From contig NC_086373.1 of assembly GCF_036588685.1 (NCBI RefSeq), positions 41,664,001 through 41,728,000 on the forward strand: a stretch of 64,000 bases of DNA. Reading direction: 5' to 3'. The notes beneath the pieces are model-generated. The model did no database searches and was not told the origin of the DNA. It saw only the letters and a list, made by a program, of their open reading frames with translations. Source of the stretch: Mytilus trossulus (lineage: Eukaryota). Positions 3,293 to 31,099 of the stretch are shown here, piece after piece; positions within the stretch are counted from its first letter, which is position 1, and every line of letters begins with the position of its first letter. A program made the position numbers and the translations under genes.

Positions 3293-4310
3293 TCATGGTG
3301 AATATCCATTAGACAGTCTTCTTCTACAAATTCTGTGACAATTAACATTGGCACAGTATCTATTTGTTGGACAATCTCCATCACCAAAACAGTCATTTTT
3401 GCAATCAGTTTTTCCTCCTTCCACTGACTGAAAAACTACTCCTGAACCAGAAGTACGACCTGATCCACTACGTCTTGAAGAAACATTGTCTAGTACAACA
3501 CGCCCACCTCGTCTAGAACTGATTGAGTCAAGAATATCGGCACCTGTATGACCAGACCCTCCTCGGCCACTACCAATAGTGTCCAAATGAGAATTTCTGG
3601 ACAGACCCACATTTCTAGCCAGACCAGATGAACCAATTCGTCTAGAGGTGAAATGATCATCATCGTCAGATAAAACTCGGGACAAACCAATTGAAGAGCC
3701 TCTAATTACTCCAGATACAGAGGTCCTGCCACCAACAGAGGCACCAGATAATCCTCTACCGGAAGATGACCCGTGTGTAATGAATTCACTGCCTATTCCA
3801 TGAGATGTTCCAACATTTCTTGATCCTGTTCGTCTATTTGCATCGATAACATCCAGTACAGAAAGAGATCCGTCACTACGACGCCTGTTTATGTTTCTAC
3901 CAACTGTGTTTTCGACCAGTAAAACCTTTTCCACTCCATGTCTATCTAATGCATGCTTATCTGAGGGTGCATATACTGTAAAAATAAATATCTGACAATT
4001 TATGTGATTTTTATGAATTGATTAATTGGAGAAAAAATAATATAGGTGATTTTTTTTTATTAAACAATATAATGATAGCAAGTATTATCGGCAATAAAAG
4101 GACTACACACCATTAGCAAAGGGACGTTGTTGCAAGCAATAGCAGAGACTGTTCGGTTTATAAAATATCAGCTGTTTTAAAGAACATTCTGTGGAAGGAT
4201 ATTCAAATGTTATTTCGAGAAAAAACATACATGTAATGAACGTTTTTCTTACCGGCTACTGTTATTGTGGTCAATGCCATCAACACGAAAATGGTCTGAA
4301 ATTCCATCAT
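3293..4310 (-). CDS. Secreted Gly/Ser/Arg-rich protein with C-terminal 6-Cys WAP-like domain (copy 1, 246 aa)
   Basis: Coding exons 4253-4310 (MMEFQTIFVLMALTTITVA, phase-1 GT donor) and 3293-3975 (TACAG acceptor), joined frame open. C-terminus CKNDCFGDGDCPTNRYCANVNCHRIC. AATAAA at 3235-3240 on the minus strand. Confidence 0.9.
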
Positions 4311-4418
4311 TTCTTAGTCTGAAATTTAGAGGAAAAATATCGTTACTTACAAAATAGCAGTTCAAATGATTTAATAAGAATTATGTAAATCGTGAAAATA
4401 AAACTTCAATCTATAAAT

Positions 4419-5433
4419 TAGTGGTTTCAACGGTTAACCGATCAACCTAATACCGAATACAAAACTGGCTAACTGGTTAACTGGACTTTTTTTCAATTTG
4501 GTAGATTTGATTTAAATTTTAATTAAAATCATTAATAGTTTTATTTAAAAATTGTCGTTGTGGTAATTAATTAGAAAACTCAATTGTCCAGTATATTGAT
4601 TTTAATTAGAAGTTGTCTCCCAGCTCGGGGCAGGATCTTAAAGAAACACAATAAGTATACATATCTTTAAACAGTAACTTTGAAGCAGTAATGCGATTAA
4701 ATTTTGCGATTTATTTCATGCATTCGTTTTTTATCTAATTTTGGGTAAACCTACTTTTAAATGGGTAACCTTCGTCGTGTAAGGTTTAGTTTTACTTTAA
4801 ACGAAATGCTAGCTCAAAAATTGTGAAATGCAAACCAATGTGAATGTACTCAATGTATACGTAATAGTACGAGTAACATGCTTAAAGAAACAAGCAAACG
4901 AAGCAAAGAAAAAGAGTGCGGTGACCCATAGTTGTTAATTTCTGTGTCATTTTGGTCTCTTGTGGAGAATTGTCTTATTTGCAATCATATCACAGCTTCT
5001 TTTTTTATAATTAATCATTTAAAATTGAAACACTTCACATGTTTTTTAAAGACAACAAGAGAAAAGGAAAGAATAATCGGTTTCAGATATATTCAATTCT
5101 ACAAAATAAAGAAGTTTGTTTTTTTAATCTGAAGTTGTTACAGACGCTGTAGTTGATACGGTGTATTTGATTATTAAAAGTCAAACTTCGCCAGGAATCC
5201 TAAAAAACAAGCCTCATAATGCCAAAGGACAATATTCATTTCTAAAAGCGTAAATTTATGACATGGATGAGAGGTTGTCAAATTGACACTCATACCACAT
5301 CTTATATCTATGTGTAGAGTGCTAACGATAAGGATTTCAAACCCGAATTTAAACTATACCGGTTAACCGATTAATCGGTCGAACGATTATCCGAATAACC
5401 GGTTAGGCAAAATTGTACGATTTGACAACACTA
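4419..5433. mobile_element. Non-autonomous hAT-type element in intron 1 of copy 1
   Basis: 8-bp TSD CTATAAAT (4411-4418, 5434-5441); imperfect TIR TAGTGGTTTCAA/TTGACAACACTA; GGTTAACC subterminal repeats; empty site in copy 3 at ~22793. Confidence 0.85.
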
Positions 5434-5901
5434 CTATAAATGCAATAGGTTTTTCAAAGAAATTAGGATCACTTTACGAATTAGAAAGATACATATGATG
5501 CATATTCACGAATAAACAAATGCAGAAAAAGAAATTTTCACAACTTACATTGATTGTCAAGTATAAGTTTAAGATATGCATTTACTATTACAGTATTTAA
5601 ACTTAAAAAACAAACATTACTTCGAATGATTATTCACTTTAATATCTCAAATAAATATTTCATTTCGAATTAAACTTCCGATGTATTATAAAACACAGTA
5701 AACATCAGTACTTATACTTTAAAGAATTATGTTGCTACTGTATTTTTATTTTTATTACTAAAATCAATACTAAAATGCTAAACAATGCACAACGCTTTAA
5801 AAATTTTAAAGCCTTTTTACTCAATCTTTAACGACGTATTTCTATCTTTGTTTATATGGCATTTAATATAATTGTTTATAACTGCTTTAATATTTTCCTA
5901 C

Positions 5902-6075
5902 CTTTGTTTGGAACAATTCGAGTTATTGCTAATGAATAATGTTTCACTGCCTCCAAATCGTTCTTTTATACCGTTTTCAAATATATATTGTTTATAATAC
6001 ACATGTACACAAGGAAAGTTTATGTTTAACCGCAAATGATGAATGCGTTGATCATAGTTGCACTTTCAAATGTCA
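5902..6075 (-). promoter_or_regulatory. Core promoter and non-coding first exon of copy 1
   Basis: TATAAAA at 5964-5970; donor CAAAG|GTAGG at 5902/5901; conserved ATTCATCATTTGCGGT at 6029-6044. Same layout in all four intact copies. Confidence 0.7.
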
Positions 6076-9000
6076 CACTGTCGTAGTACTAAGAAACTTC
6101 AATAAATGTCTAAGTACGAAAGTTTTCTCAGGGTCAATGACACATTTTGTTTCCTCCTACAATCTACACAGTTTTTATTACGTCATAATACATGTACTTG
6201 TTATGAAATATTGTTTTGACCTATTATTAATTTTCTCAAATAAATTTATGGTATATTTGGTAGTAACCAGAGACTTGTGCAATATAAAAAAAAATTAAAC
6301 TGAAGACTTTTATTTCCTTTAAGACGATAATTTTATTTTCTTTCAATTGTTTGGAAAACCGCTGCGTAAAGGTTATATAGCTGACGTTGGAAAACTCTTC
6401 TAAGTTTTTGTTAGGACTTTAAACGTATATGCAATACTAGCGATTTGTCTGCATATGGTTTACTAGTATCAAATACACAGGGCTCAGTCAAATATGAGTT
6501 ACAAGTTTTATGAAATAGAAAACTAAGAATTGAAAAAAAAAGTTGTGTCAAATCTTGGCACCGTTAGTTTTGTCTTGGGTTAAAAAAAAATATGTCCTGA
6601 TTCGTTGCCTTTCGAAATGTTGTATTGAATGTAAAAATTCAGACAATTATCTTTCTCCTCACATTCAATTTTACTCTGAACTTCATTATAAAAGATTTAC
6701 AAAACAGACTTGTTCTTTCGTTCCGTATTAATATTTTGTGTTAATTTTTTTAGGGGGATAAAACGTCTCTGAAGCCCCTTATCCCATGGCAAAATCCAAA
6801 TCTCATACACATCAAACGAAATGATATCAAATGGTATATTACTGACATGGTACAAGCATTTTCTTATGCAGACAATGGTGAATAAAAACATGTTGCATAG
6901 CTAGCTAAACCTTTCACTTGTTTGACAGTAACATCAAATTCCATTATATTGACAACGATGGGTGAACAAAACAAAGAAACGCAATAGGTAAAAATGTCAG
7001 AAAAAAGGGTATAGCAATACAAAATTGTGTCATTATCTTTATTACCGTAGAAACAAGCAAATATGTAACATAGAAGCACAAAACGTGATATAGGCAGAGC
7101 ACATTAGCAAAATGAAAGACAAGAACACAAACATTTATAAGAGCACACTTACGGGATGTATAAGTATAGATTGACGCAGAGGTTGAAATAAGCGCTAGCA
7201 CCAATTTGCGTCTGACCAGTAGAGTTTGTCAGCTTGTGGTTTGGTGAACCAGTAGAAGTTTGTCGATAAAAAAATATATGATTGCATTGCAATCTCGTTT
7301 GGTTTTCGAAATCGATAACGGAGTACCGGAGATCTTAGTATTACAATTGATCAAGTTTATTGATATATCGGATGGGCGTTCTTCACAACACAAAATTTGA
7401 AAACTTTTGGAATGGTTTAAATCGCAGGACAGTAAAAAATAAGTGACATTAGAAGGAAGATCAAAATTAAAGTTGATGAAACTGACTAAATATAATGTAA
7501 AAATCCTAGGGAAAAGATCTCGAATAGTCGATTGTCATGCAATGAATAGATAAGAAATTGATTTTTGTATCGGTATCTTCAAATCTTAAGTCAGATTATG
7601 TACATGTCATGAACAATCAGAACAGCACAAAAAAATCTACGGGAATAAAGGAGAGAAAAAATAATGTGGAAAGAAAAGCAAAGTTTATTATAGAACAATA
7701 ACACAATGATGGGAAGAAAAAGTACAGAGCCACGTCATATGAATCAAAGTAAAACAAAAAGGCATATAGACCAAACAAATTAGCAAAGATAAAAGACAAG
7801 AATTCAAAAATTATAATAGAACAATAACACGATGCCGGTATGTTTAAGTACAGAGCCACGTCATAAGTATTACAAAAACTCTAAAAGGGCATATAGACAA
7901 AAGACATAAGCAAAAATAAAAGACAATTATACACAATTTATCACAAAAAGTACAATGCATAACACATTGACGGAATGTTAAAGTACTGAGTCACGTCAAA
8001 TAGATATCACCAAAAACAGACTAAATAGTTTAAAAGTAATCATTTGATGTTCTATCTGGACATCTGTATGAATATTATATAACATGTCTCTATAAAAAAC
8101 AATATTGACATAATTTATAACATGCCTGTTTATAAATTTAGATATTGTAATATTATAAATAATAAGGTTTCAACTCTCTTAGAAATTTTGACCAAAAAGG
8201 GATTTTACTATTATTTCATGTCCTTTTTTGTAATGGAGGTCATCAATTGTTACGATTTATGTACTTTCCTGGTTTGAAATATTCGGCTTCAGCGTACATG
8301 AGAAAGGCAAATGCGTTTGAAAGCATTCAATTTGTAAAGCAATGAATACATACTTTTGGAAATGTCAATAAATTCTCGACTCTTCAATAGATAGCCAGAC
8401 ACGATATAGAATGGATAATGGTAACTCTTAAAAAAACATAGGTTCTTCGAATAAAGTTATGTATTTATTGGTGTTTAGATCGATAACTGTAAAATCTTCT
8501 TTCAATAGAATAAAAAAGCCGTCAGTTTATTTTTCGACTTATGGTTGTGAATGTCCCTTTAAATAGAAGTAAACAATTGAAAAAAACAAAAAATACCCAA
8601 GTGAGAGCGACAAAATCATGACATGAAAAATGAAAATGGATGAAAAGACAAATAGTAGTCCATAAAATTAGGAAAAGAATTAGTAGTGAGAGGACATTAT
8701 CAAGGTAGTGATAGGTAGCTCTTGCATCTTTACAGTTTTCTCGAGAAGCGACTGTCTGGTGTCTGCTTCATATGAATGAAGAAAAAACCCAGTCATTAGA
8801 AAATTTGGCTTCCTTTCGATTGGCAAACACAAATTAAAAAGGGGAGATGGCAATTATTTTGAAAATGCCAAAGGTATAAAGAACAGAAAATAACCAAAAT
8901 GAAAAAAATATTTTTTTAGGAAGATGTTAAACCTGTTCATAGTATTTGGTTTACAATAACAATTTCAAGAATTTAAATAAAACTATCACACCACTTTTAC

Positions 9001-10316: not shown

Positions 10317-10899
10317 GTAGATTATATATAAACAATACTTATAAGAATTAATGTTTTGTAAATTAGAGCCTAACACTGTGATGATAATTCCTTTTCAATT
10401 TGAAGATTGACGATTATAATCTTAAGGTAATTTGACCATTGATGACGGGGTAAGAAGAGATACTATACAAAATATATGCGAATTGATTTTTTAAAATAAT
10501 TCAATAGTTTGGTTTTTAATGAGGATGGTTCTCGTCCTTTTTGTAAGCATATGTTCAAACTTTGTAAAATCAGATACGTCTTAATAATTGTTGTGTTTCC
10601 AACAACATTTCAACAACATGTCAGGCAGTGGTTTTCAAGTTATTTCAATTAAACGAGAAAAAACACGTCCAAACCATGAGGTTATACAATGCGTTTAGTT
10701 AATTTATAAACAGTACAAGTCTTTGATTACAACTAAATTAATAACATTAATATTTAACCATATTATAAGAAAGTCAGAATAATATTTCGTAATAACTACA
10801 TGTATTATGACATAATGACAAATGTTGGAAGAAAAAGAAATGACCCTGAGCACACTTTTTCTTTAAATAAGCATAATCCAAAACTACACAAAACATGAC

Positions 10900-11075
10900 G
10901 GAGTGACATTTAAAAGTTAAAAAAAAGTTAAAAACAATAATTAATTCATCATTTGCGGTGCAGTTACACACTTCCTTGTGTGTATGTCATTTAAGAGAAA
11001 AATAACCAAAATGGTATAAAAGAATGATTCTGAAGCAGTATTTATCATATACTATTACGACTGCTTTGAACAAAG
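10900..11075 (+). promoter_or_regulatory. Core promoter and non-coding first exon of copy 2
   Basis: GTGACATTTAAAAGT, then ATTCATCATTTGCGGT (~10944-10959), TATAAAA 11015-11021, donor CAAAG|GTAAG 11075/11076; acceptor TTTCAG at 11754. Confidence 0.7.
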
Positions 11076-11217
11076 GTAAGAAATTATTTAAACAAACGTA
11101 AATATTGAAAAAATATCGTAGATAAACAAAACATTAAGTATGAAAAATAGTCAAGAAATAATTCATTGAAGAAAATGAAAAGCTTAAATTAAGTTTCACA
11201 TACTTAAAGGTACAATG

Positions 11218-11765: not shown

Positions 11766-13330
11766 ATGATGAGATTCCAGACCTTTTTCTTTTTGATGGC
11801 ATTGACCACCATGGCAATAGCCGGTAAGTAAACTATTTAACTTGCTTTCTTCAAGTTTACAGACTGTTTTAACGGAAGTGTTTTGGGTGTCAATATACAA
11901 AAAATTAAATACCTTACTATTAACAAATTTCAAAAATATAATTTCAGTACTTATTATTTTATTATTTGTATATTCTTGAAGAAAATTTAACAAAAGGTTT
12001 TCTTTTTGAATTGAATCAGATTTGTCATATGGAGTCTTGTATATCTTACAATACTGTATGGCGTAATCCGTACGTTCACTGTAGCTGTTAACGTCCTAGG
12101 CATTTCATCTATAGGGAATAGCCATCTAATTGGCAAACATATAAGATATCCTTACATTTATAAGAGAGACGAAGGATACCAGAGGGAGAATCAAACTCAT
12201 AGGTGGAAAATAAAAGACTAAGCAACACGAACCCAACCAAACACTAGGGGTGATCGCGGTGCTCTAGAAGGGTTAGCAGATCCTGCTCCATATGTGGCAC
12301 CCCTCATGTTGCTTAAGTCATTATAAATTCAGTAAATAGTCTTATTCAGTAGGTCATATTCGTGAAAAGGGAAAGGTATTGTAGTTACGACATAAGGAAC
12401 ATCCGATAGCATCTGTGAATCCTACATATACACAAGAAATAACTTTTTTTTTTTTTTATATTACTAGAATTCTGAAAGTTATATAAAATGTCAGACCTTA
12501 ATTTTACAGTTTATGCACCAACTGAAAAACATGCATTAGATAGACATGGAGTGGAAAAGGTTTTGCTGGTCGAGAACCAAGATGGAAGAAACATCAACAG
12601 GCGTCGAGGTCGCGAATCTCTTTCTGTACTGGATGTTATTGATGCAGGTAGACGAGCAGGATCAAGAGCTGGAGCTGTTGGAACATCTCATGGAATAGGA
12701 AATGAATTTCTAACACACGGGTCATCAGCCAGTATAGGATTGTCTGGTGGTTCTCTTGGAAGTAGGACCTCTGTATCAAGAGGCACTTTAGCTGGTTTGT
12801 CTCGTGCTTTATCTGACGATGACAGTATCAGTAATTGTCATTATGGGTGTGGAGAAGACAAGTTATGTCGTTTAGGACATAAATGTGTACATGATGGTTG
12901 TAGCAGTTACTGCGTCGAAATTTCTTCTAGCAGGTCATCATCTGGCTTGACCAGAGTTTCAAGTAATGATGGTCATATATCATCTGGCAGCAGAATTGGT
13001 ACATCTGGTTTGGCTAGAAATTTTGATCTCTCTCGCAGTTCTCGTTTGGAAACCATAAGTAGTGGCCGTGGAGTGTCTGGTCATTCGGGTTCTGATATTC
13101 TTGACGCAATCAGCTCTGGACGTGTTGGACTAGACATAGTTGATTCCAGACGCAGTGGATCAGGCCGTATCTCTGGTTCGAGACTCGTTTCTAGGTCAGT
13201 AGTAGGAGGCAAAACTGATTGCAAAAATGACTGTTTTAGTGATGGAGATTGTCCAACGAGCAAATACTGTGCATCTGTAAATTGTCACATGATTTGTAGA
13301 AGACGACCGTCTAAAGGATACACAGGGTGA
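11766..13330 (+). CDS. Secreted Gly/Ser/Arg-rich protein with two 6-Cys WAP-like domains (copy 2, 292 aa)
   Basis: Coding exons 11766-11823 (MMRFQTFFFLMALTTMAIA) and 12510-13330. Internal CHYGCGEDKLCRLGHKCVHDGCSSYC and terminal CKNDCFSDGDCPTSKYCASVNCHMIC. AATAAA 13382-13387. Confidence 0.9.
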
Positions 13331-16300
13331 AAAGCCTATCACCGAAATCCAGACTTGAAAATCTTATTTATATTTTTTTACAATAAAATATTACATTCAG
13401 TTTGTGTCATAGTAAGAATTTTCCGTACTACATCATAAAATGTCGGTAACTCAGGCGTAATAATAACCTTTTTACTAATCAGAAAAAAATATAACAACAT
13501 ACAGACTTAACCAAAGATACGAAGAAACGATAATAAAACTCAAACAATAATTGACAACAAAACATTAAAAAAAAACAAATTATAAGTTAAACCCTCCTAG
13601 CCAAAATTCTTGCTAATATAACAGTGTTTAGCATGCCGCTTAAATGCCTACATGGCAGGGTTCAAGTACAAACAACAATAAGAAACACCGGTACAGAGAA
13701 ATAATCAAATATATATTAAAAAAATACATTTCAATTTGGAAACCGCAGCTTTCCCACGCGACGATTACCATGAATGGACGACGAAAAAAAAACAGTTATG
13801 AAAGAATGTAGAGTTATGCCTGATATATAAACACAAAGCCTTATCAAGTTTTAAATTGATCTGCATTCTAAAATAAGTACTAAACTTTTTTCTATTGGAT
13901 ACGTGGTTATAGCTAGTTAAATCGGAAAACTAAAGAATCTTAAAAAAGAACCAGCGAAAGACAAAAAACAAAAGTAAATTTGCAACGATACTGAACTCCG
14001 AGAAAATTCAAAATGAAAAGTCACTAATCAAATGGCAAAATCAAATGATAAAACACATCAAACGAATGGATAACAACTGTCATATTCAAAACTTCACTGG
14101 GGAGGAGGGGGAGCAGCTATCCGTAACTTCTGTTACGGACCGCCCAATATGGAAGTATCGGTAAGATTTTATATTTTCCAAATACTTTTGATCGAAAGAA
14201 TTGTTTGGAGATTAGTATGCCGTCCATTATCACTCAACTTCAGCTGCTCTATGGTCGGGTTGTTGTCTCTTTGACACATTTCCCATTTCCATTCTTAGTT
14301 TTATTTATTGAGAAAATTAGTAATTGTCCGTTTAGTATATACAACAACACGAATATCAAGTGTTCTGGAGAGAAAATAACGATAAAATGGTTTTATATGA
14401 CTTTAATAGAATTAAAACGGCTATTCGTAACGGATTTTTTTAAACACTGTAGACACCAACAATGGTATATGCAAATTGAAAAGCCGATATTTGAAATCTA
14501 TTTAATTAAAACCGATCATGAACAGTTAATTCTTTCATTTATTAACACACAAAAAACGGGAAAACGAAAATATATGAACTGGAAGTAAATATTTCGTTAT
14601 TTCAAGGAAAATTCCATTCAACCAAGAAAGCCGAGGAAAGTTTGAGCGTTTAAACTTTTTCAAATTTGTAGGTATTAAAAGCAACGTATTTGATATGCAA
14701 AATACATATTTTCGTTTCAGCTTGTATGAACACTGTTATACTGTTCTCATGCTAAATCCCAATTAAACAAAACTCCGTATGTTATATCATTAAGGGGGGT
14801 ACATAACACCTTAGAAAAGATAACTCTTACTCCTTGTCTAATTCATTGCTACGTTTTAAAATCATTTTTAATAAGCTTTTAAAAGAACAGAATCAGAATG
14901 TTTTCATTGCTGCATCTTTAAATTCATTTATAGTTAGATATTTACAATAAGTTAATCTTCAAAGAGTCATAATATGAAAATTTCAAAGTGAAATACATTT
15001 ACAAAAGAATACCAGGAGGTTAACAGAAAGGACCATAACTGTTTTTAGTTTTTTAACCTAGACCTTTCATATAAGAAATAAAATATATCTTATCTTAAAT
15101 CATCTTATAATAAAATAAAGTTCCAAAAATCAAAAGTATTAGGGAGCTATCATCTGATTTTAGGAAAGGGTGGGGGAGCGTAGGATAACAAATTGTGTCT
15201 GGCATTTTTCTAATTGTAATCATTGTCCTTCATTTTGATTTTTAACTCTTTTCGGACTTGACGTTTTTTTACTTGTTTATCCTGACATTTTTAACATTAA
15301 ACATAAATTGTCTTCCCGCTTGTTTCGCCATGTTGCCTGTCATCAGTGTCATGCCTTATTATTTTTTAACTCAACCTCCTGTTCTGCCTTTTTTGCAATG
15401 TCATCATCCAATCCTCCCTACTTAAATGGTACCTCTCTCTGACAATAAAATGCTAACCAAATAAATAAATAAACTAGGTACCTATGTCAAAAGAAGTAGG
15501 AGTACGAAAAAAATAACAACATTAAGTTGACCATAAGGTTATATGTAAAGTTCATAAGAAGGTCATCATGCAAGACACTTAATCTCATGATGATACATCC
15601 ACATGCCAAATATCTAAGGTCTAGTTAGAAAGACGACACATTTATGACCATTATGTACTATCAGAATGGATTTTGCTCTCATTTAATGAACCAATTTGAG
15701 TTAAAGGCGTATTTTAAACTTTTACGAAAAAATCAGGTGATTGAATTAAAAATATTTGCGAGAACAACCGATTAGTTCAGCACTAAAATGGTTAGCTTTT
15801 ATGAAAAAAAATTAAAGGACACGTTTTTTTTATTCAAAAAAAATTTTCTTCTTCAATTACTAAAACCATCACATTCAATTGTCAGGGCGGGCTCTGATTC
15901 CCCCACTTTTTTTTTATAGCTTAGACAAAATTTGTAATCCATATTAAAAAAAATACTTACAAGTAAAGGGTATCAGTGATCTAGTATTAGCCTCAGTTAT
16001 AAGTATTAGCTATATTTTTTTTTAATATTACCAATTATACCCCTATACCTATATTTCTGAAACTTCGAAATTTGACCGATATTATCATGTAAAAGATGTC
16101 ATATTTGAGTTGCGAAAGCTTTTAAACCTATTGTTTTCAAACATTTTACAAGATGTTAAGCTTGGCAAAATGTATCAATGAGAGAAAAAATAATAATACT
16201 ACAGTTTTTTTTTTTTTGGGGGGGGGGGGGGGGGTATAGTGCATAAACAAAACACACAATCTTAAACATATTTTCATTTATTTAGATCAATTTGTTTTTA

Positions 16301-17790: not shown

Positions 17791-17820
17791 ATAGAAATTA
17801 CAAAAATGTAAGGACAGTTT

Positions 17821-19554
17821 TCACCAGCCCAGTAGTCAGCACTTCGGTGTTGACATGAATATCAATTATATGGTCATTTCTATAAATTTTCTGTTTACAA
17901 AACTTTGAATTTTTCGAAAAACTAAGGATTTTCTTACGTCCAGGAGTAGATTACCTTAGCCGTATTTGGCACAACTTTTAGGAATTTTTGGGTCCTTAAT
18001 GCTCTTCAACTTTGTATTTGTTTGGCATATTAACTGTTTTGATCTGAGCGTCACTGATGAGTCTTATGTAGACGAAACGCGCGTCTGGCGTATTAAATTA
18101 TAATCCTGGTACCTTTGATAACTATTTACACCACTGGGTCGATGCCACTGCTGGTGGACGTTTCGTCCCCGAGGATATCACCAGCCCAGTAGTCAGCACT
18201 TCGGTGTTGACATGAATATCAATTATATGGTCATTTCTATAAATTTTCTGTTTACAAAACTTTTAATTTTTCGAAAAACTAAGGATTTTCTTACGTCCAG
18301 GAGTAGATTACCTTAGCCGTATTTGGCACCTTTTTTCGGAATTTTTGGGTCCTCAATGCTCTTCAACTTTGTATTTGTTTGGCATATTAACTGTTTTGAT
18401 CTGAGCGTCACTGATGAGTCTTATGTAGACGAAACGCGCGTCTGGCGTATTAAATTATAATCCTGGTACCTTTGATAACTATTTACACCACTGGGTCGAT
18501 GCCACTGCTGATGGACGTTTCATCCCCGAGGGTATCACCAGCCCAGTAGTCAGCACTTCGGTGTTGATATGAATATCAATTATATGGTCATTTCTATAAA
18601 TTTTCTGTTTACAAAACTTTTAATTTTTCGAAAAACTAAGGATTTTCGTACGTCCAGGAGTAGATTACCTTAGCCGTATTTGGCACAACTTTTAGGAATT
18701 TTTGGGTCCTCAACGCTCTTCAACTTTGTATTTGTTTGGCATATTAACTGTTTTGATCTGAGCGTCACTGATGAGTCTTATGTAGACGAAACGCGCGTCT
18801 GGCGTATTAAATTATAATCCTGGTACCTTTGATAACTATTTACACCACTGGGTCGATGCCACTGCTGGTGGACGTTTCGTCCCCGAGGGTATCACCAGCC
18901 CAGTAGTCAGCACTTCGGTGTTGACATGAATATCAATTATATGGTCATTTCTATAAATTTTCTGTTTACAAAACTTTTAATTTTTCAAAAAACTAAGGAT
19001 TTTCTTACGTCCAGGAGTAGATTACCTTAGCCGTATTTGGCACAACTTTTAGGATTTTTTAGGTCTTCAATGCTCTTCAACTTTGTATTTGTTTAGCATA
19101 TTAACTGTTTTGATCTGAGCGTCACTGATGAGTCTTATGTAGACGAAACGCGCGTCTGGTGTATTAAATTATAATCCTGGTACCTTTGATAACTATTTAC
19201 ACCACTGGGTCGATGCCACTGCTGGTGGACGTTTCGTCCCCGAGGGTATCACCAGCCCAGTAGTCAGCACTTCGGTGTTGACATGAATATCAATTATATG
19301 GTCATTTCTATAAATTTTCTGTTTACAAAACTTTTAATTTTTCGAAAAACTAAGGATTTTCTTACGTCCAGGAGTAGATTACCTTAGCCGTATTTGGCAC
19401 AACTTTTAGGAATTTTTGGGTCCTCAATGCTCTTCAACTTTGTATTTGTTTAGCATATTAACTGTTTTGGTCTGAGCGTCACTGATGAGTCTTATGTAGA
19501 CGAAACGCGCGTCTGGCGTATTAAATTATAATCCTGGTACCTTTGATAACTATT
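17821..19554 (+). mobile_element. Non-LTR retrozyme array: 357-bp unit x ~4.9, one hammerhead ribozyme per unit
   Basis: Units start at 17821, 18178, 18535, 18892 and 19249 and are near identical. Each contains GCGTCA-CTGATGA-GTCT-TATGT-AGAC-GAAA-CGCGC-GTC-TGGCGT. Confidence 0.9.
18048..18091 (+). ncRNA. Minimal type I hammerhead ribozyme (also at 18405-18448, 18762-18805, 19119-19162, 19476-19519)
   Basis: CUGAUGA and GAAA core; stem II GUCU/AGAC; stem I GCGUCA/UGGCGU; palindromic stem III ACGCGCGU; GUC cleavage triplet ending at 18085. Confidence 0.9.
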
Positions 19555-21341: not shown

Positions 21342-21646
21342 TATACATACAACAATAAACAAATAAACATATTATATCCCAAGGTAGATATGGTAAACAG
21401 TTTTCGCAATTGAAATATATCCTCATACTTTTTATGTTATAATAAAGAATTCGTTTATACCTCTTTTTATAATCTAAGATTTCTATGCTTATACCATTCT
21501 GTTTTATAAAGAAAATCGTTACTTTTCCGTATTGTCTAGCTATCAGCACGTATCCAGCATTAACATAACAAAAACTTAATACAATATTTTATTTTAGAAA
21601 GGATATCAAAAAGTGTTCATAATATAGGATTTCGGTGATAGGCTTT

Positions 21647-22693
21647 TCATGGTGAGTATCCATTAGACGGTCTTCTTCTACAAATCCTGTGACAGTTAAC
21701 AGTGGCACAGTATCTGTTTGTTGGACACTCACCGTCACTAAAACAGTCGTTTTTGCAATCAGTTTTTCCTCCTAACACTGACTGAGAAATTAGTCCTGAA
21801 CCAGAAGTACGACCTGACCCACTACGTCTGGAAGAAACAGTGTCTAGAACAACACGCCCACCTCGTCCAGAACTGATTGCATCAAGAATATCTGCACCTG
21901 AATGACCAGACACTCCATGGACACTACCAATAGTTTCCAAATGAAAATTTCTGGACAGATCCGCATTTCTAGCCAGACCAGATGAACCAATTCGGCCGCC
22001 AGAGGTGAAATGATCATCATCGTCAGATAAACCACGGGACAAACCAATTGAAGAGCCTCTTATGATTCCAGATTTAGAGGTCCTGCCACCAACAAAAGCC
22101 CCAGACAATCCTCTACCGGAAGATGACCCGTGTGTAATAAATTCACTGTCTGTTCCATGAGATGTTCCAACATTTCTTGATCCTGCTCGTCTATTTGCAT
22201 CAATAACATCCAGTACAGAAAGAGATCCTTCACCACGACGCCTGTTTATGTTTCTTCCACCTGTGTGTTCGACCAGTAAAACCTTTTCCACTCCATGTCT
22301 ATCTAAAGCATGCTCATCCGAGGGTGCATATACTGTAAAATAAATATCTGACAATGAATATGATTTTCATGAATTGATTCATTCGAAAACAAATACTGGG
22401 GAATTATTTTTATTTAACAATGCAATGATATAAGGTATTATTGCCAATAAAATAGTTACACACTCTAGGCAAAGGGACGTTGTTTTAAAAAATTGAAGAG
22501 ACTGTTCGATTTTGTAAATATAAGCTGTTTTAAGAACATTCTGTGATAGGATAATCAAATATTATCTACACACTGAAAACACCTTTATTTAATACATTAC
22601 AAATTTTGAGAAAAACACTTGAACATTTTTCTTACCGGCTACTGTTATTGTGGTCAATGTCATCAACACGAAAATGGTCTGGAATCTCATCAT
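21647..22693 (-). CDS. Secreted Gly/Ser/Arg-rich protein with C-terminal 6-Cys WAP-like domain (copy 3, 247 aa)
   Basis: Coding exons 22636-22693 (MMRFQTIFVLMTLTTITVA) and 21647-22332; canonical splice sites; AATAAA 21588-21593 on the minus strand. Confidence 0.9.
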
Positions 22694-23466: not shown

Positions 23467-23725
23467 ATAACAATTAATAAAACTTTGAAGCAGTATGTTA
23501 CTTCTGTATTTATGTTTAATAACTTAAATCATTACTAAAATCAATACAAAAATGTATAACAATGCACCACGCTTTAAACTTGATAAATCGTTCTTTACTA
23601 AATCTTTAACGTCTTATTTCTATTCTTAATACTATGGCGTTAAATATCATTCTTATATCTTTCATATTTATGTTAAGTAAACCAAATAGTTAAAAATGTA
23701 TCATTCTGCTTTAATAATTTCTTAC

Positions 23726-23900
23726 CTTTGATTGGAACAATTCGAATTGTTTCTAATGAATAATGTTTTACTGCCTCCAAATCGTTCTTTTATACAGTTT
23801 TCAATTATATTGTTTATAATACACATGTACACATGGATAGTTTTAATTTAACCGCAAATGATGAATTTGTTGATTGTAGGTGCACTTTTAAATGTCCCAC
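23726..23900 (-). promoter_or_regulatory. Core promoter and non-coding first exon of copy 3
   Basis: TATAAAA 23788-23794, donor CAAAG|GTAAG 23726/23725, conserved motif at 23851-23866. Confidence 0.7.
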
Positions 23901-24467
23901 TGTCGTAGTACTAAGGAATTGTAATGTATGTCTATGGAAATAACACATTGTGTTTCCTTCTACAATCGATGTTGTTTTCATGACGTCATATTGCATGTAC
24001 GTGTTTTAAACTATTGTTTAACCTATAAGTAATGTTTTCAAATAAATAAATTTTATATTTGGTAGTAGCCAGAGACTTGTACAGTTTAAAAAAAAAAAAT
24101 GAAGTCCTTTATTTCCTTATAGACGATATTATAAATTCTTTGGATTGCTTGGAAAACTGCTGCTTAAAGGTTACACAGTTGACATTTGAAGAAGCTTTTC
24201 TAAGTAATTATAAGGATTTCATTTCAATCTAATACACAATACTAGCAATTTGTCTGCATTTAATTTACAAGTCTAATGTTAATATGCCTCAAATAAAATC
24301 AGGTTTGGATTTAAAAAGAAAAGGTAATCTAAGAATTCAAACAAAGTTGAGTCAAATCTGGGCTATGTCAATTTTGTCTTGGGATTACAAAAAAGGTCCT
24401 GTTTCGTTGCGTGTCAACATTTTTTGTCTGATGAAAATTTTCAAACAATTACTTTTCATCTTAACTA

Positions 24468-26217: not shown

Positions 26218-26630
26218 TATAGGTATAACCTTAAAAAAAAACCGGGTACATCAGTCAGCAGTGTTTTATAATCTTAATCACTTTAAAAACAAAACAAATA
26301 TGTATCACAGAAGCACAACAAAAAGAGATAAAACAGTTAAAGTCATTCTGTATACCAACTTATTTTCGTGGATAATTTATTTTGCTTTTGCTGTTCTAAA
26401 ATTTACCTGATGAAGATAAATAATGAAAAATGTAATGCTTGCATGTATATCCGCGACGATTTATATTTGCGTTATTTTTCTTCTCGCAAAAATTGCAAAA
26501 ATAAGTTGATATACAGTATTCATAAAGACAAGTAGAAGAATATACAAACACGTTATTAAGATTATAAACAACGTCAGTATCCAGATTCTATTCTTAAAGA
26601 CCATCGGTTATTATTTTATAGTATTTATTT

Positions 26631-26700
26631 TGATGAGTCTTATGAGGACGAAACACGCGTCTTGCGTACTAAATTATAATGCTGGTACCTTTGATAACTA
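26631..26700 (+). mobile_element. Retrozyme fragment with broken hammerhead
   Basis: TGATGAGTCTTATGAGGACGAAACACGCGTC...GGTACCTTTGATAACTA; the 5' strand of stem I is missing. Confidence 0.75.
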
Positions 26701-26833
26701 CATGTATTTAGAAGTTGATACGGAATATTTATCAATTAGGTTTTGGTAAACAGTTATTCGTTTACCAAAGAACAAATCAGCGAGCGAGCAAATTACAGAT
26801 TGCAGAAGGGCCTTCAACGTTAAGCATTGTTGA

Positions 26834-27453
26834 GGGCATACAATAAATTTTTATCCAGTATTTAAAAATATCTATGAAAACTGGCATGTAGGCTATTTTT
26901 TATCTGATTAAATCAAATATGTAATAAAAGATATACCTTCATGTGCTACTTTTTGAGTAAATTGAGGTTAAAATTTCAGATTTTCCCTCAAATTACGGAA
27001 TTGTAGACGTATTTTTCCTTTTGATAGAAATGCACAACTTTTTTGTTTTAAAAGATAAACACGATTTGTTTTTTATTAAATTATTTGTAATTGATGTGTT
27101 ATATAAATATTACATAAATTTGTACATTTATTTTTACAAATAACTCAAATGTATCAAATGATCATGAATGTAGGAAACAACCGTTATTTTTGGATGTATA
27201 TTAATCAAATTTAAAAAAAATGCACTATTTACGTTTTTAAGAAAATTAGTACCCATAATCTTCTTACGTAATCAAACCAAATGTCATTTTTAAAAAGAGG
27301 GGTCTATGAATTTGTTTTCAAGTTTAATCAGTTTGAATGATAAAAATCAGACGAAAACTGCATCTTTTCCCGATAAGTCACCGTTTGACGTTGTAAAAAT
27401 AACAATTTACGTTAGCCACGTTATTATCCCCCCTGTAACTGTTGTGTATGCCC
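26834..27453. mobile_element. MITE with 4-bp TSD TTGA
   Basis: TTGA-GGGCATACA...TGTATGCCC-TTGA. Confidence 0.65.
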
Positions 27454-29179
27454 TTGAAACCGACCAGGTTGCTAAATAAATTACAGGACTCTAAAACCAA
27501 ACAAGCGAAAGTAGATAGACTCTTCATGTAATAGTTTTGTGTAAATCATCATTGTTAGGTTCGCGTTCTTTTCTAGTCAATGGTCAATAATTTGTTTGCA
27601 TGAAAATTTGAAAAATATTTTTAAAAGGTATGATGTTTAAGACAGTTATTTGAAGTTCTTATCCTATAAATTGGACCAGGTCAAACGTATCTACGCCATC
27701 GGTGATAAATATATAGATACATGAGAAATGTAATCGATATTTGGTATTTTAATCGGACTTTATATAGGAGTTTCAATATTTCTTAGTATTTCAAATTTCA
27801 TTTCATTGACCTTATATATCTTATAACTGTTTGTATTTTTGTAAAGTAAACAACGTGAATCATCTACTAATAAATGCAATAGTACAAATAGGTTTAAAGT
27901 GCAAGCATGTTCTGTCTCAAAATTAAGTTTTATAATAAACCTACACAGATTATTTAGAAATAGTTTTTTTTTTTATCTGCGAGCGCTCCGTCGCCACGGT
28001 GTTTGGTGTGTTTCCTGTTTTAATTTGTGTAGTTTTCTAGTCCTGGTTGTTTTCTGCAAACTGTTGTCCTTATTGGTTATTTTTGTAATTTTTGCCGAAA
28101 TGTTCTTTAGTTAATTCTTTTTCTGTGGATGAAAACATAAAAAGAAGTGACCATTCTATTATGTAACCCAAACATTATCTCACAGCCAAAAGAAGATTAA
28201 ACAAATGGTACAGTTGGCTTTTAACCCGGATTTGTAATCTTTCAATCGATTAATGACTTTGGAATAGCGGTATACTACTTTTGCCTTTATTTGTAACTTA
28301 AAACCTAACACAGTGATTTTAATTCCTTTTCAAATTTCAGATTGTCGATAACAATCATAATATACATTATCGCACCGCGGGTAAAATATCAAGTTGTGAT
28401 TGGTTTAACGTATGAGAACGTATGGGGTTAGTAAATTCCATAGGGGTTCATGACGCGTTAATGGTGACGTAATCTATTAATGTTGTTGTGTTTCATTGTA
28501 AATTATTCAACAAAACGCAGCAAAAAAAGTCCAGCGTGCGATAAATTCGTTATACGGTTAACTACTGACCCCCTACGGATCCATAGATGGTGAATAAACT
28601 CCATAGGGAACACGGCCGCCCGCCTCACCCCTATTGAATTTACTAACCCTCTTTGGATCCGTAAGGGGGTCAGTAGCGAACCATATAACTCATAATGACA
28701 GAGGATGAACAGGGGATATGCAAAATACATGTACATGAGAACTGATTTTTTAAAATTGTTCAATTGTTTGGTTTTGAATGAGGCTGGATCTCGTCCTTTT
28801 TGTAAGCATCTTCCTATATCTATAAACTCATACTTTGTTAAATCAGATACGTTCTATTGAGTACTGCGTTTCAAAAAACCATTCGAACAAAATGTCAAGC
28901 AGTGTTTTTTAAGTAATTTCAACTTGAAGATAAAAAAAAATCCCTACCATGAGGCAATAAAAAAACGTTTGGACAATTTTTAAACAGTAAAAGTCTCTGA
29001 TAACAACGAAATTAATTATAACGTGCAAATTTAACCATACTGAAGATAAGTCAAAATAATATTTCATAATAACTACATAACGTTATGATAAATGTGTGTA
29101 GTAGAAGTAAGAAAACGCAATGACCCTGTGTACAGTTGCTTTTATGAATAAGCATAATCCAAAAACTGCATAGAAGAAT

Positions 29180-29356
29180 GCAGGTGACATTTAAAAGTTT
29201 GATCCATAATTAACAAATTCATCATTTGCGGTTTATTTACAAATTTCCTTATGTGTATGTCAACTATTAAAAAACTATTTGAAATGGTATAAAAGAACGT
29301 TTATACAGCAGTACAACAATATTCATTACAAATCAATCCAATTGAGTTAAACAAAG
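29180..29356 (+). promoter_or_regulatory. Core promoter and non-coding first exon of copy 4
   Basis: GTGACATTTAAAAGT, ATTCATCATTTGCGGT (~29217-29232), TATAAAA 29288-29294, donor CAAAG|GTAAG 29356/29357. Confidence 0.7.
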
Positions 29357-29517
29357 GTAAGACATATTTTAAAAATACATAATTATTATGAAAAAGAATG
29401 ATAAATATTCACAACAATAGTTATGCTATTTTGACAAAGATCAACAAGAAATATTTCATTGAGAATAAGAAAAAGATATAAATCAAGTAATACATATTTT
29501 TAGGGTAAAAATGATTC

Positions 29518-29914
29518 AATAGACCACTTTCGAGTTCATCCGTCACCGGAAAAAAACTCGTCAATTATACGCGCCTTTATCATCGTCATTTGTGCGTTTA
29601 GGGGCGTCGTCACTTCCTTCCAATGATGAGCGAGTGGTTGGAAAACTATAATTCTATATTGTACGAATTATTCGGCAAATTGAATTCTCAAAATTGACAA
29701 TCAACACTGCTTTCATTAGGGAAATGTCAGTAAGTACCTACAGAGCAACCATTATTTCTAGTTTATCCTGCACAAAGACGATCACTAAGACGCTTGATGA
29801 ACGTAAATAGTGCAGGGATACATGCGAGCCCCTCTATCTGGTAAATGACGTCATAAAGGCGTGTATAATTGACGAGTTTTTGCCGGTGACGGATGAACTC
29901 GAAAGTGGTCTATT
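29518..29914. mobile_element. MITE with ~60-bp TIRs in intron 1 of copy 4
   Basis: AATAGACCACTTTCGAGTTCATCCGTCACCGG...CCGGTGACGGATGAACTCGAAAGTGGTCTATT; TSD unclear. Confidence 0.8.
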
Positions 29915-30120
29915 CTATTTTCTGTATTTGAAAAAATGCAATTTCAGTGATTTAAAGCAAATTAAGAAAATGTTAGAAAGAAACAATGTAGCGCAAGTTA
30001 ATTAAGAATGGTAAATCAAAAAGTGTGCAAACTTTTCTCAACATTTCTTTCTTTATTTAAATATATGAAAATCCCAGTAAAATATTATATTAATTCTGTT
30101 GTTTTTCAGAATTTCTAAAG

Positions 30121-31099
30121 ATGCTGAGATTCCAGACCATTTTCTTTTTGATTGCATTGACCACAATGACAGTAGCCGGTAAGTACACTGTCAAATTTGT
30201 GCTTCTGCAAGTTTACAGGCTGTTTTAATAGAAGTGTTAAGGGTGTTAAGATACAAACATCTGAATGCCTTACTATCGATAAATCTTCAAAAAATTACGA
30301 TTTCAGTACTTATAAAGTTTATTTACTGAATTTACATTTTTGTCATTTTTGTTGTTTTTGCATTACTTAATTTGTGAACGTTATATAAAATGTCAGATAT
30401 ATTTATTTTACAGTCTATGCACCCACGGAAAAACATGCATTAGATAGACATGGACTGGAAAGGGTTTTGCTGGTCGAAAACACAGTTGGAAGAAACATAA
30501 ACAGGCGTCGTGGTGAGGGATCTCTTTCTGTACTGGATGTTATTGATGCAAATAGACGAGCAGGATCAAGAGGAGTTGGAACATCTCATGCAATAGGCAG
30601 TGAATTTATTACACACGGGTCATCTTCCGGTAGAGGATTGTCTGGGGCGTCTGTTCGAGGCAGGAACTCTGTATCTGGAATCATTAGAGGCTCTTCAACT
30701 GGTTTGTCTCGTGATTTATCTGACGATGATGATCATTTCACCTCTGGCAGCCGAATTGGTTCATCTGGTCTGGCTAGAAATGTGGATCTGTCTGGAAATT
30801 CACATTTGGAAACTATTGGTAGTGGCCATGGAGTGACTGGTCATTCAGGTGCAGATATTATTGACGCAATCAGTTCTGGACGAGGTGGGCGTGTTGTACT
30901 AGACACCGTTTCTGCCAGACGTAGTGGATCAGCACGTACTTCAGGTTCAGGGTTCGTTTCTCAGTCAGTGGTAGGAGGAAAAACTAATTGCAAAAATGAC
31001 TGTTTTATTGATGGAGATTGTCCAACAAACAGATACTGTGCCACCGTTAACTGTCACAGGATTTGTAGGAGAAGACTGTCTAATGGATACACACCATGA
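30121..31099 (+). CDS. Secreted Gly/Ser/Arg-rich protein with C-terminal 6-Cys WAP-like domain (copy 4, 247 aa)
   Basis: Coding exons 30121-30178 (MLRFQTIFFLIALTTMTVA) and 30414-31099; AATAAA 31152-31157. Confidence 0.9.

What the first reader, a model, noticed from the sequence alone, without database searches (positions are those of the whole stretch)
3293..31099. Expanded family of secreted Gly/Ser/Arg-rich proteins capped by a three-disulfide 'reduced WAP' domain
Seen: four intact three-exon genes with a 19-aa signal peptide, a ~190-aa G/S/R-rich low-complexity body and a C-x3-C-x5-C-x5-C-x4-C-x3-C tail containing DGDCP (DGECP in copy 3). Established: WAP four-disulfide cores pair C1-C6, C2-C7, C3-C5 and C4-C8, and Gly/Ser-rich plus WAP architectures occur in abalone lustrin A and type II crustins. 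Inference: these domains retain C2, C3, C4, C5, C7 and C8 and lack exactly the C1-C6 pair (the CC doublet is CA or CV), a coherent paired loss. I do not recognise the family. It is a candidate lineage-specific extracellular matrix (shell, periostracum or byssus) or defence system. Tyr is scarce, so it does not look like a DOPA-rich foot protein.
Basis: partly seen in the sequence, partly recalled or inferred. Interest (0 to 1): 0.85.

Follow-up and report, generated by a model that had tools for sequence, protein, structure and literature searches.

The report
Mussel secreted proteins with reduced WAP knot
This stretch of a Mytilus trossulus chromosome holds four working copies of a roughly 30-gene mussel family; each encodes a secreted, floppy Ser/Gly/Arg-rich protein ending in a small three-disulfide knot that is a WAP domain minus one disulfide, and the genes are already annotated but their function is unknown.

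Summary
The window holds four intact three-exon genes: a 5' exon, a 19-aa signal-peptide exon and one large exon. It also holds a truncated pseudogene and an orphan signal-peptide exon.

The window is Mytilus trossulus. Copies 1, 3 and 4 are identical to RefSeq 'uncharacterized protein' models. Relatives in four other Mytilus species carry the automatic UniRef name 'WAP domain-containing protein'.

The WAP reading holds:
- The six Cys align with WAP C2, C3, C4, C5, C7 and C8.
- WAP is the only Pfam family hit consistently.
- The four best structural matches among 48,161 chains are all WAP domains.
- Longer paralogues carry a canonical 8-Cys WAP in front of the same modules (hhalign P 2.8e-7).

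The knot is under strong purifying selection (dN/dS 0.10). The body is predicted disordered (dN/dS 0.40) but carries conserved motifs.

The one-module genes form a single clade, seen only in the M. edulis species complex. Six-Cys WAP domains were already described in whipworms.

My best guess is a secreted matrix or coat protein, not a canonical protease inhibitor.

This scan has already reported the same family on neighbouring windows.

The parts
5902..5970 (-). Copy 1: TATA box (5970-5963) and 5' exon ending at donor CAAAG|GT
   Evidence: Alignment of the four promoters; mapping of the RefSeq N-terminus and of copy 2's exon 1. The transcription start itself is not mapped.
4253..4310 (-). Copy 1: signal-peptide exon, coding part (ATG at 4310, 19 codons plus 1 base, GT donor)
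   Evidence: tblastn with family signal peptides; splice context
3293..3975 (-). Copy 1: large exon (mature 227 aa, stop at 3295-3293); AATAAA at 3240. Identical to M. trossulus RefSeq protein P0013 (LOC134708004)
3326..3403 (-). Copy 1: C-terminal six-Cys WAP-derived module
11015..11075 (+). Copy 2: TATA box (11015-11022) and 5' exon
11766..11823 (+). Copy 2: signal-peptide exon, coding part
12510..13330 (+). Copy 2: large exon (mature 273 aa, two modules); AATAAA at 13382
12836..12913 (+). Copy 2: internal six-Cys module, absent from the one-module copies
   Evidence: AF2 pLDDT 58-71
13220..13297 (+). Copy 2: C-terminal six-Cys module
   Evidence: (pLDDT 86-87, beta-hairpin)
23726..23794 (-). 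Copy 3: TATA box (23794-23787) and 5' exon. The RefSeq model XP_063424334.1 starts further upstream, at 23826
22636..22693 (-). Copy 3: signal-peptide exon, coding part
21647..22332 (-). Copy 3: large exon (mature 228 aa); AATAAA at 21593. Identical to XP_063424334.1 (P0001)
21680..21757 (-). Copy 3: C-terminal six-Cys module (DGECP variant). This is the sequence modelled on its own
29288..29356 (+). Copy 4: TATA box (29288-29295) and 5' exon
30121..30178 (+). Copy 4: signal-peptide exon, coding part
30414..31099 (+). Copy 4: large exon (mature 228 aa); AATAAA at 31152. Identical to M. trossulus RefSeq protein P0008 (LOC134708030)
30989..31066 (+). Copy 4: C-terminal six-Cys module
51742..52134 (+). 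Truncated pseudogene: C-terminal half only, no signal-peptide exon found, last Cys changed to Phe
552..608 (+). Orphan signal-peptide exon with an intact GT donor and no large exon in the 2.7 kb downstream

Best explanation
What it is: four functional paralogues of a single-locus Mytilus gene family. Each gene makes a secreted protein of about 228-273 residues. The protein is cationic (pI 9-10) and has a mostly disordered Ser/Gly/Arg-rich body that carries conserved short motifs: three [IVL]LDx[IV][SD][SA] motifs, several conserved RR/RRR sites and a VSQSV-GGK motif. It ends in a 26-residue three-disulfide knot followed by a basic RRR-x-S-x-G-Y tail.

The knot is a WAP domain that has lost the C1-C6 disulfide together with the N-terminal segment that carried C1. 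The ancestral architecture is still present in longer paralogues: signal peptide, canonical 8-Cys WAP, then Ser/Gly linkers alternating with six-Cys modules. The 3-, 2- and 1-module forms lack the canonical WAP. The 1-module clade arose once inside the 2-module clade, then amplified in alternating orientation in the M. edulis species complex.

How it most likely works (inferred, about 45%): it is an abundant extracellular matrix or coat protein secreted by foot or mantle. The knot would be a stable, protease-resistant terminal binding or cross-linking node. The disordered cationic body would be a flexible tether that uses its conserved motifs to bind endogenous partners or to self-assemble. 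High gene dosage would supply bulk product.

It is probably not a canonical elafin/SLPI-type protease inhibitor. The C1-tethered segment is gone, and the C2-C3 loop is 3 residues long, as in waprins, instead of the 8-residue loop that forms the binding site in SLPI.
For: Shown here:
- Intact ORFs, splice sites, TATA boxes and poly(A) signals in all four copies.
- Copies 1, 3 and 4 are identical to RefSeq models.
- The module spacing is invariant in 324 modules from the family and its relatives.
- Pfam WAP is the only family hit consistently, always at profile positions 9/10 to 39/41. The window copies score 13.8-20.1 bits, all 13 three-module proteins match (best E 4.6e-6), and proteins built only of six-Cys modules score 58-59 bits, E about 1e-15.
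- Omwaprin, elafin and nawaprin align with the Cys in register, and Ala sits at the C6 position.
- In the AF2 model the body has pLDDT below 50 and the C-terminal module 86-87, with a beta-hairpin. The module modelled alone has pLDDT 78.
- VIA-align against 48,161 chains: the top four are all WAP domains. They are omwaprin (Z 4.2, rmsd 2.0 over 35 residues), half-SLPI (4.1), elafin (3.8) and nawaprin (2.9). The next, unrelated chains score 2.4 or less. With the whole model, the only three chains at Z 2 or more are WAP domains. The Foldseek top ranks are also WAP domains.
- Paralogues P0075 and P0079 carry a canonical WAP (30-51 bits, profile 1-41/41) followed by 4-8 six-Cys modules.
- hhalign of 102 unique modules against the family's own canonical WAP domains: probability 93%, P 2.8e-7, aligned to C2 through C8.
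- dN/dS is 0.095 in the module, 0.40 in the body and 0.34 overall.
- Between paralogous loci only the genes (85-91% identity) and promoters (75-82%) are still alignable.
- The one-module genes form one clade (SH-aLRT 99) nested among the two-module genes.

Inferred:
- The matrix or coat role rests on gene dosage, on motif conservation across five species, on the alternating hydrophobic/polar stretches, and on published foot- and mantle-specific expression of WAP-like proteins in another mussel (PMC5549309).
- In the SLPI structural alignment, the module's first Cys falls inside SLPI's C2-C3 loop. That fits a 3-residue loop against SLPI's 8-residue loop. The SLPI numbering comes from established knowledge, not from a tool.
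Against: - No expression, tissue or proteomic evidence could be obtained. Accession and peptide searches of the literature found nothing.
- Each single-module WAP score is below Pfam's gathering threshold.
- Every structural score is weak in absolute terms (Z 4.2 or less, Foldseek E 0.05 or more), as expected for a 35-residue domain.
- The disulfide pairing is inferred from the alignment register. It was not measured, and no model coordinates were available.
- A cationic WAP-derived protein from an amplified gene family fits a defence role about as well.
Confidence: 0.6

Rival explanations
1. Host-defence effector. The protein is a cationic, WAP-derived antimicrobial or surface-protecting protein, analogous to type II crustins (signal peptide, Gly-rich region, C-terminal WAP) or to snake waprins. 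It would be secreted into mucus or haemolymph and would act on microbial envelopes rather than on proteases.
For: - Net charge is +6 to +11 and pI 9.2-10.1.
- The best structural match is omwaprin.
- The C2-C3 loop is short, as in waprins.
- The topology (signal peptide, Gly/Ser-rich region, C-terminal WAP-type knot) is the same as in type II crustins (my own knowledge).
- Large lineage-specific tandem families are typical of mussel antimicrobial peptides.
Against: - There is no sign of diversifying selection (dN/dS 0.34 overall, 0.10 in the knot).
- Body motifs are conserved across five species, which suggests a conserved endogenous partner rather than an arms race.
- A 190-residue conserved body is unusual for an antimicrobial peptide.
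- No expression data are available.
Confidence: 0.25
2. Polyprotein precursor. The conserved di- and tribasic sites (NRRR, NRR, SRR, CRRR) are cut by proprotein convertases, releasing several peptides and a free knot domain with signalling or antimicrobial roles.
For: Four RR/RRR sites per protein are conserved across architectures and species.
Against: - None of the sites matches the furin R-x-[KR]-R consensus.
- No Gly-dibasic amidation signals are present.
- The stretches between sites are long and Ser/Gly-rich rather than peptide-like.
- The RR sites are weaker or missing in the remote relatives P0085 and P0090.
- Processing was not tested.
Confidence: 0.08
3. Canonical serine-protease inhibitor of the elafin/SLPI kind that protects secreted material or tissue from proteolysis.
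For: - The domain is homologous to WAP.
- Protease inhibitors, WAP-like proteins among them, are enriched in mussel foot and mantle transcriptomes (PMC5549309 and PMC7971044).
Against: - The module lacks C1 and the whole segment in front of C2.
- It has 3 residues between C2 and C3, where elafin and SLPI carry the 8-residue P1'-side binding loop. The elafin profile alignment starts only at C3, and the SLPI structural alignment puts the first Cys inside the loop.
Confidence: 0.05
4. The six-Cys module is not derived from WAP. It is an unrelated small disulfide knot, for example related to the Dumpy DPY module or another knottin, that happens to share WAP's Cys spacing.
For: - The Dumpy DPY module gives the single best PDB profile hit (E 0.066) and weak Pfam hits (E 0.25-2).
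- All WAP scores for single modules are sub-threshold.
Against: - DPY covers only four of the six Cys.
- WAP is hit by every family member, always in the same register.
- Proteins made only of six-Cys modules pass the WAP threshold at 59 bits.
- The top four structural matches are WAP domains.
- A canonical WAP sits in the same proteins and aligns at P 2.8e-7.
Confidence: 0.05

Closest known systems
WAP four-disulfide core domain (Pfam PF00095), especially the non-inhibitory waprins (omwaprin 3NGG, nawaprin 1UDK)
   Same: - C2-x3-C3-x2-[DN]-x2-C4-x5-C5 ... C7-x3-C8 is in register.
- The model has a central beta-hairpin.
- These are the best structural matches (Z 4.2 and 2.9).
- The C2-C3 loop is short and the protein is cationic.
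   Different: - C1 and C6 are absent (Ala or Val at the C6 position), so there are three disulfides rather than four.
- There is one residue fewer between C5 and C7 than in the family's own canonical WAP.
- The module is attached to a 190-residue disordered body.
Six-cysteine WAP domains of trichocephalid nematodes (Trichuris, Trichinella; Foth et al. 2014, PMC5012510)
   Same: - The WAP domains have exactly six Cys.
- They occur in expanded families of secreted proteins with 1-9 domains.
- Only a few canonical 8-Cys WAP domains are kept alongside them.
   Different: - The phylum is different, so the origin is presumably independent.
- The text I read does not say which Cys pair is missing.
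- The nematode proteins are described as SLPI-like arrays without a long Ser/Gly/Arg body.
Type II crustins of decapod crustaceans
   Same: Signal peptide, then a Gly-rich region, then a C-terminal WAP-type domain; cationic and secreted.
   Different: - Crustins keep the full 8-Cys WAP plus four further Cys.
- Their Gly-rich region is short.
- There is no detectable sequence relationship outside the WAP core (comparison from my own knowledge).
Abalone lustrin A and perlwapin (shell matrix WAP proteins)
   Same: They are molluscan secreted matrix proteins. Lustrin A combines a Gly/Ser-rich domain with a C-terminal WAP-like domain, and perlwapin is built of three WAP domains.
   Different: - The window copies give no Lustrin_cystein hit.
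- There are no Pro-rich modules.
- Those proteins have canonical 8-Cys WAP domains.
- No shell-proteome evidence exists for this family.
Trappin / pre-elafin
   Same: Signal peptide, then a disordered anchoring region, then a C-terminal WAP domain. A conserved Gln and Lys sit just before the knot (VSQSV-GGK).
   Different: There are no GQDPVK transglutaminase-substrate repeats, the domain has six Cys, and the inhibitory loop is absent.

Membership tests
WAP four-disulfide core (PF00095 / PROSITE PS51390) | Eight conserved Cys forming four disulfides | tested here: not met
   There are exactly six Cys per module in all 324 modules examined. C1 has no counterpart and C6 is Ala or Val.
WAP four-disulfide core (PF00095 / PROSITE PS51390) | Score at or above Pfam's gathering threshold (20.8 bits) | tested here: not met
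   The window copies score 13.8, 20.1, 15.6 and 15.0 bits. Relatives built only of six-Cys modules reach 58-59 bits by summing modules.
WAP four-disulfide core (PF00095 / PROSITE PS51390) | Core motif C-x2-[DN]-x2-C-x5-C-C | tested here: inconclusive
   C-x2-[DN]-x2-C-x5-C is present in all three module types. Only the second Cys of the doublet is missing.
WAP four-disulfide core (PF00095 / PROSITE PS51390) | WAP fold (spiral with a central beta-hairpin) | tested here: met
   In the AF2 module model the top four of 48,161 chains are WAP domains, Z 4.2-2.9, with 34-35 residues aligned. The absolute scores are low because the domain is small.
WAP four-disulfide core (PF00095 / PROSITE PS51390) | Common descent with canonical WAP domains | tested here: met
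   A canonical WAP and six-Cys modules occur in the same proteins (P0075, P0079, P0090, P0094). hhalign gives probability 93%, P 2.8e-7.
WAP four-disulfide core (PF00095 / PROSITE PS51390) | Disulfide pairing C2-C7, C3-C5, C4-C8 kept | not testable with these tools
   Model coordinates are not returned. The pairing is inferred from the alignment register only.
Elafin/SLPI-type inhibitory WAP | Exposed protease-binding loop around C2, tethered by C1-C6, with an 8-residue C2-C3 loop | tested here: not met
   There is no C1 segment and the C2-C3 spacing is 3 residues. The loop lengths of elafin and SLPI come from established knowledge.
Type II crustin | Gly-rich region plus 4-Cys region plus 8-Cys WAP (12 Cys in all) | tested here: not met
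   The one-module proteins have six Cys in total.
Lustrin A-like | Lustrin cysteine-rich repeats (PF14625) with Pro-rich spacers | tested here: not met
   The window copies give no PF14625 hit. One partial M. coruscus relative (P0078) gives a single hit at E 0.012.
Dumpy DPY module (PF21164) | Four-Cys module of about 24 residues scoring at or above 27 bits | tested here: not met
   The scores are 8.9-11.8 bits. The PDB profile hit has E 0.066 and covers four of the six Cys.
Trichocephalid six-Cys WAP | The same Cys pair missing | not tested
   The paper's text gives only the count of six. The figure and supplement were not available.

The most novel reading that the evidence does not exclude
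The family is a mytilid-specific, self-assembling extracellular material protein, for example of byssus, periostracum or a mucus coat. A WAP remnant with three disulfides has been co-opted as a terminal cross-linking or anchoring knob. The conserved [IVL]LDx[IV][SD] and dibasic motifs of the disordered body are the assembly or cell-binding sites; they resemble the LDV/IDA/LDT integrin-type motifs.
Probability: 0.25. Interest if true: 0.6.

Novelty: new variant of a known kind. Interest (0 to 1): 0.4.

Why it matters
Mussels are models for underwater materials and for invertebrate innate immunity. This is one of the larger single-locus secreted-protein families in the Mytilus genome. It is conserved in five species and strongly amplified in the M. 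edulis complex, yet it has no assigned function.

It also gives a clean natural series for studying how a classic disulfide domain is simplified and redeployed. The series runs from a canonical 8-Cys WAP plus many six-Cys modules, through 3-, 2- and 1-module forms. It parallels the six-Cys WAP expansion in whipworms.

If the proteins turn out to be abundant in byssus, shell or mucus, they would add a new component class to those materials. If they are antimicrobial, they would add a new mussel effector family.

Tried and rejected
That part (41.73-41.87 Mb) was studied only through database proteins.
All searches used the large exon by reference, or database proteins.
- PDB profile search with the whole three-module alignment gave only noise.
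- ESM Atlas gave no usable hit for P0002. For P0083 it gave only a weak WAP lead at 0.78.
- Literature: no paper in the library mentions family accessions or tryptic peptides, and a byssus proteome supplement lacks them. Searches on Mytilus plus WAP, byssus, shell or hornerin gave only generic statements.
- Pseudogene or chance ORF: rejected, because of the dN/dS values, the intact splice and promoter signals, and the RefSeq identity.
- DOPA-type foot protein: rejected, because Tyr is 1.3%.
- Mucin: rejected, because Pro is scarce.
- The NCBI names 'hornerin-like' and 'probable GH family 25 lysozyme 3' are treated as artefacts of composition.

Full report
**1. What is in the sequence**

The six-frame ORF list shows four long ORFs of 210-280 aa, at 3293-3934 (-), 12488-13330 (+), 21647-22354 (-) and 30467-31099 (+). 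They are 58-86% identical to one another.

Each ends in C-x3-C-x5-C-x5-C-x4-C-x3-C followed by RRR-x-S-x-G-Y. Copy 3 reads DGECP where the others read DGDCP. The residue after the fourth Cys is Ala in the tail modules.

Upstream of each ORF lies a 19-codon signal-peptide exon, with ATG at 4310, 11766, 22693 and 30121. Each ends in a phase-1 GT donor. The large exons start after an AG at 3975, 12510, 22332 and 30414. An AATAAA signal follows each stop codon.

A third, 5' exon ends at CAAAG|GT. It is preceded in all four copies by an invariant GTATAAAAGAA box and by an invariant ATTCATCATTTGCGGT element.

Three features add to it:
- Copy 2 has an internal second module at 12836-12913.
- A truncated pseudogene lies at 51742-52134, with the last Cys changed to Phe.
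- An orphan signal-peptide exon lies at 552-608, with nothing downstream of it.

**2. Organism and public status**

The window is G000:C1:41664001-41728000 of a 1.30-Gb genome.
- Copy 3 is identical to Mytilus trossulus XP_063424334.1.
- Copies 1 and 4 are identical to two further M. trossulus RefSeq proteins, LOC134708004 and LOC134708030.

All 64-66 homologues in the 5.8-billion-protein collection that carry a source name come from five Mytilus species: M. trossulus, M. edulis, M. galloprovincialis, M. coruscus and M. californianus; two carry no name. Many have the automatic UniRef name 'WAP domain-containing protein'. No characterised family matches full length.

**3. Size and shape of the family**

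A six-frame search of the whole genome gives 46 exon-level matches. All lie between 41.56 and 41.85 Mb of this chromosome.

In the 173 kb I could fetch there are 21 large-exon copies, mostly in alternating orientation. Sixteen are intact one-module genes of 225-230 mature residues. Three more are two-module genes, one is frameshifted and one is truncated.

Family proteins come with one, two or three modules, and the Cys spacing never varies.

A maximum-likelihood tree gives these results:
- The three-module proteins separate from the rest (SH-aLRT 100).
- All genuine one-module proteins fall in one clade of 37 rows (SH-aLRT 99).
- That clade is nested among the two-module genes and contains only M. 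trossulus, M. edulis and M. galloprovincialis sequences.

So the one-module form arose once, by loss of the internal module, and then amplified.

Between paralogous loci only the genes (85-91% nucleotide identity) and the promoter/5'-exon region (75-82%) can still be aligned. The intergenic DNA cannot.

**4. Is the module a WAP domain?**

Five lines of evidence agree.

a. *Pfam.* WAP is the only family hit consistently, always at profile positions 9/10 to 39/41, which is from C2 onward.
   - The window copies score 13.8-20.1 bits, against a threshold of 20.8.
   - All 13 three-module proteins match, best E 4.6e-6.
   - Two unnamed proteins made of 9-10 tandem six-Cys modules, with no CC doublet, score 58-59 bits, E about 1e-15.

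b. *PDB profile search.* A profile of 18 modules finds elafin, omwaprin and nawaprin at E 0.14-1.3. The Cys are in register, and Ala lies opposite the second Cys of the CC doublet.

c. *Structure.*
   - AlphaFold2 models the C-terminal module at pLDDT 86-87 within the whole protein, and at 78 on its own, with a beta-hairpin.
   - Aligned against 48,161 representative chains, the four best matches are all WAP domains. They are omwaprin (Z 4.2, rmsd 2.0 Å, 35 residues), half-SLPI (4.1), elafin (3.8) and nawaprin (2.9). Unrelated knottins follow at 2.4 or less.
   - With the whole-protein model, the only three chains at Z 2 or more are WAP domains.
   - Foldseek ranks WAP domains first, but at non-significant E-values of 0.05-0.6.

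d. *Canonical WAP in the same proteins.* Longer family members start with a canonical 8-Cys WAP, followed by four to eight six-Cys modules and the usual C-terminal module.
   - These are P0075 (M. trossulus LOC134724726) and P0079 (M. californianus). Their WAP scores 30-51 bits over profile 1-41/41.
   - Two unnamed non-Mytilus relatives, P0090 and P0094, have the same layout.

e. *Profile against profile.* hhalign of 102 unique six-Cys modules against the family's own canonical WAP domains gives probability 93% and P 2.8e-7. The aligned stretch runs from C2 to C8.

The missing Cys are therefore C1 and C6. In WAP domains these pair with each other (established knowledge from the elafin and SLPI structures).

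The pairing of the remaining six Cys is inferred, not measured. The tools return no model coordinates.

**5. Selection and anatomy**

Across the 16 intact one-module paralogues, dS is 0.16. dN/dS is 0.34 overall, 0.40 in the body, 0.095 in the module and 0.16 in the tail.

The genes are therefore maintained by selection. There is no pairwise signal of diversifying selection.

The mature proteins are about 16% Ser, 16% Gly, 11-12% Arg and 7% Asp. Tyr is 1.3% and Trp is absent. pI is 9.2-10.1 and net charge +6 to +11.

AF2 gives pLDDT below 50 for the whole body. The body is nevertheless not plain low complexity. Dozens of its positions are invariant or nearly so across 53 proteins from five species. 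They include:
- the N-terminal VYAP..KH.LD.HG motif;
- three [IVL]LDx[IV][SD][SA] motifs;
- four RR/RRR sites;
- a VSQSV-GGK motif just before the knot.

**6. Range outside Mytilus, and precedent**

An exhaustive profile search of 1.84 billion representative proteins found only 19 hits at E 0.001 or better.

Besides Mytilus proteins, these include unnamed transcript-sized contigs from ENA and Logan. They share the architecture, with or without the canonical N-terminal WAP. There are also two to three proteins from unidentified organisms that consist of tandem six-Cys modules.

[quoted passage not shown] A reduced WAP is therefore not a new concept.

**7. How it probably works**

What is shown: the protein is secreted and cationic, its body is predicted to be disordered, and its terminal knot is conserved.

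What is inferred: the knot is unlikely to inhibit proteases in the canonical way.
- The segment carrying C1 is absent.
- The C2-C3 loop has 3 residues, as in waprins. The elafin alignment starts only at C3, and the SLPI structural alignment places the module's first Cys inside SLPI's 8-residue loop.

I favour an abundant extracellular matrix or coat protein, at about 45%. The reasons are:
- the high gene dosage;
- conserved motifs that point to endogenous partners;
- alternating hydrophobic and polar stretches that are compatible with assembly;
- the reported foot- and mantle-specific expression of WAP-like proteins in another mussel (PMC5549309).

The alternatives are a crustin- or waprin-like defence role (about 25%), a processed precursor (about 8%) and a canonical inhibitor (about 5%).

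**8. What could not be done**

Expression and splicing therefore rest on the RefSeq models and on the sequence signals alone. Every search used the large exon by reference, or database proteins.

**9. Earlier findings of this scan**

Follow-up notes on neighbouring windows of the same locus (s1-823539 and s1-823540) and on a related cluster 308 kb upstream (s1-826627) reach the same reading. I saw them only after my own analysis had reached it. They are not independent evidence.

**10. Verdict**

This is a real, well-preserved and already annotated gene family that has never been characterised. I class it as a new variant of a known kind, of moderate interest.

Noticed in passing
window 552-608 (+): An orphan family signal-peptide exon with an intact GT donor. 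No large exon follows within 2.7 kb. It is probably a relic of a lost copy.
   Followed up: partly
window 43121-44689 (-), 54259-55911 (-), 60614-61879 (+): Three multi-finger C2H2 zinc-finger ORFs. The first two are near-identical duplicates that flank the truncated family pseudogene at 51742-52134. They interrupt the gene cluster.
   Followed up: no
window 23726-23826 (-): The RefSeq model XP_063424334.1 starts at an in-frame ATG upstream of the conserved TATA box. This puts 36 residues in front of the signal peptide. The real start is more likely the MMRFQ Met used by the other family models.
   Followed up: partly
window 5885-6120, 10860-11095, 23710-23945, 29140-29375: All four promoters share an invariant GTATAAAAGAA box and an invariant ATTCATCATTTGCGGT element about 55 bp upstream of it. 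Copy 4's promoter resembles copy 2's, although its coding body belongs to the one-module clade.
   Followed up: partly
P0083, P0084, P0088 (unnamed ENA/JGI/Logan proteins): Proteins from unidentified organisms built wholly (P0083, P0084: 9-10 tandem modules) or partly (P0088) of six-Cys WAP-type modules without a CC doublet. P0083 and P0084 score 58-59 bits against Pfam WAP; P0088 only 11.8. So the reduced module is not confined to mussels.
   Followed up: partly
G000:C1:41651767-41652528 and 41655464-41656225 (outside the window): Two large exons that encode identical proteins, 3.7 kb apart. No intact signal-peptide exon was found for the second one. This looks like a very recent tandem duplication.
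   Followed up: no
P0025, P0079: The NCBI names 'probable GH family 25 lysozyme 3' and 'hornerin-like' given to family members look like artefacts of Ser/Gly-rich composition. They are not functional annotation.
   Followed up: no
window 17821-19554: The 8-kb gap between the convergent 3' ends of copies 2 and 3 is where another first-stage note places a hammerhead retrozyme array. I did not examine it.
   Followed up: no
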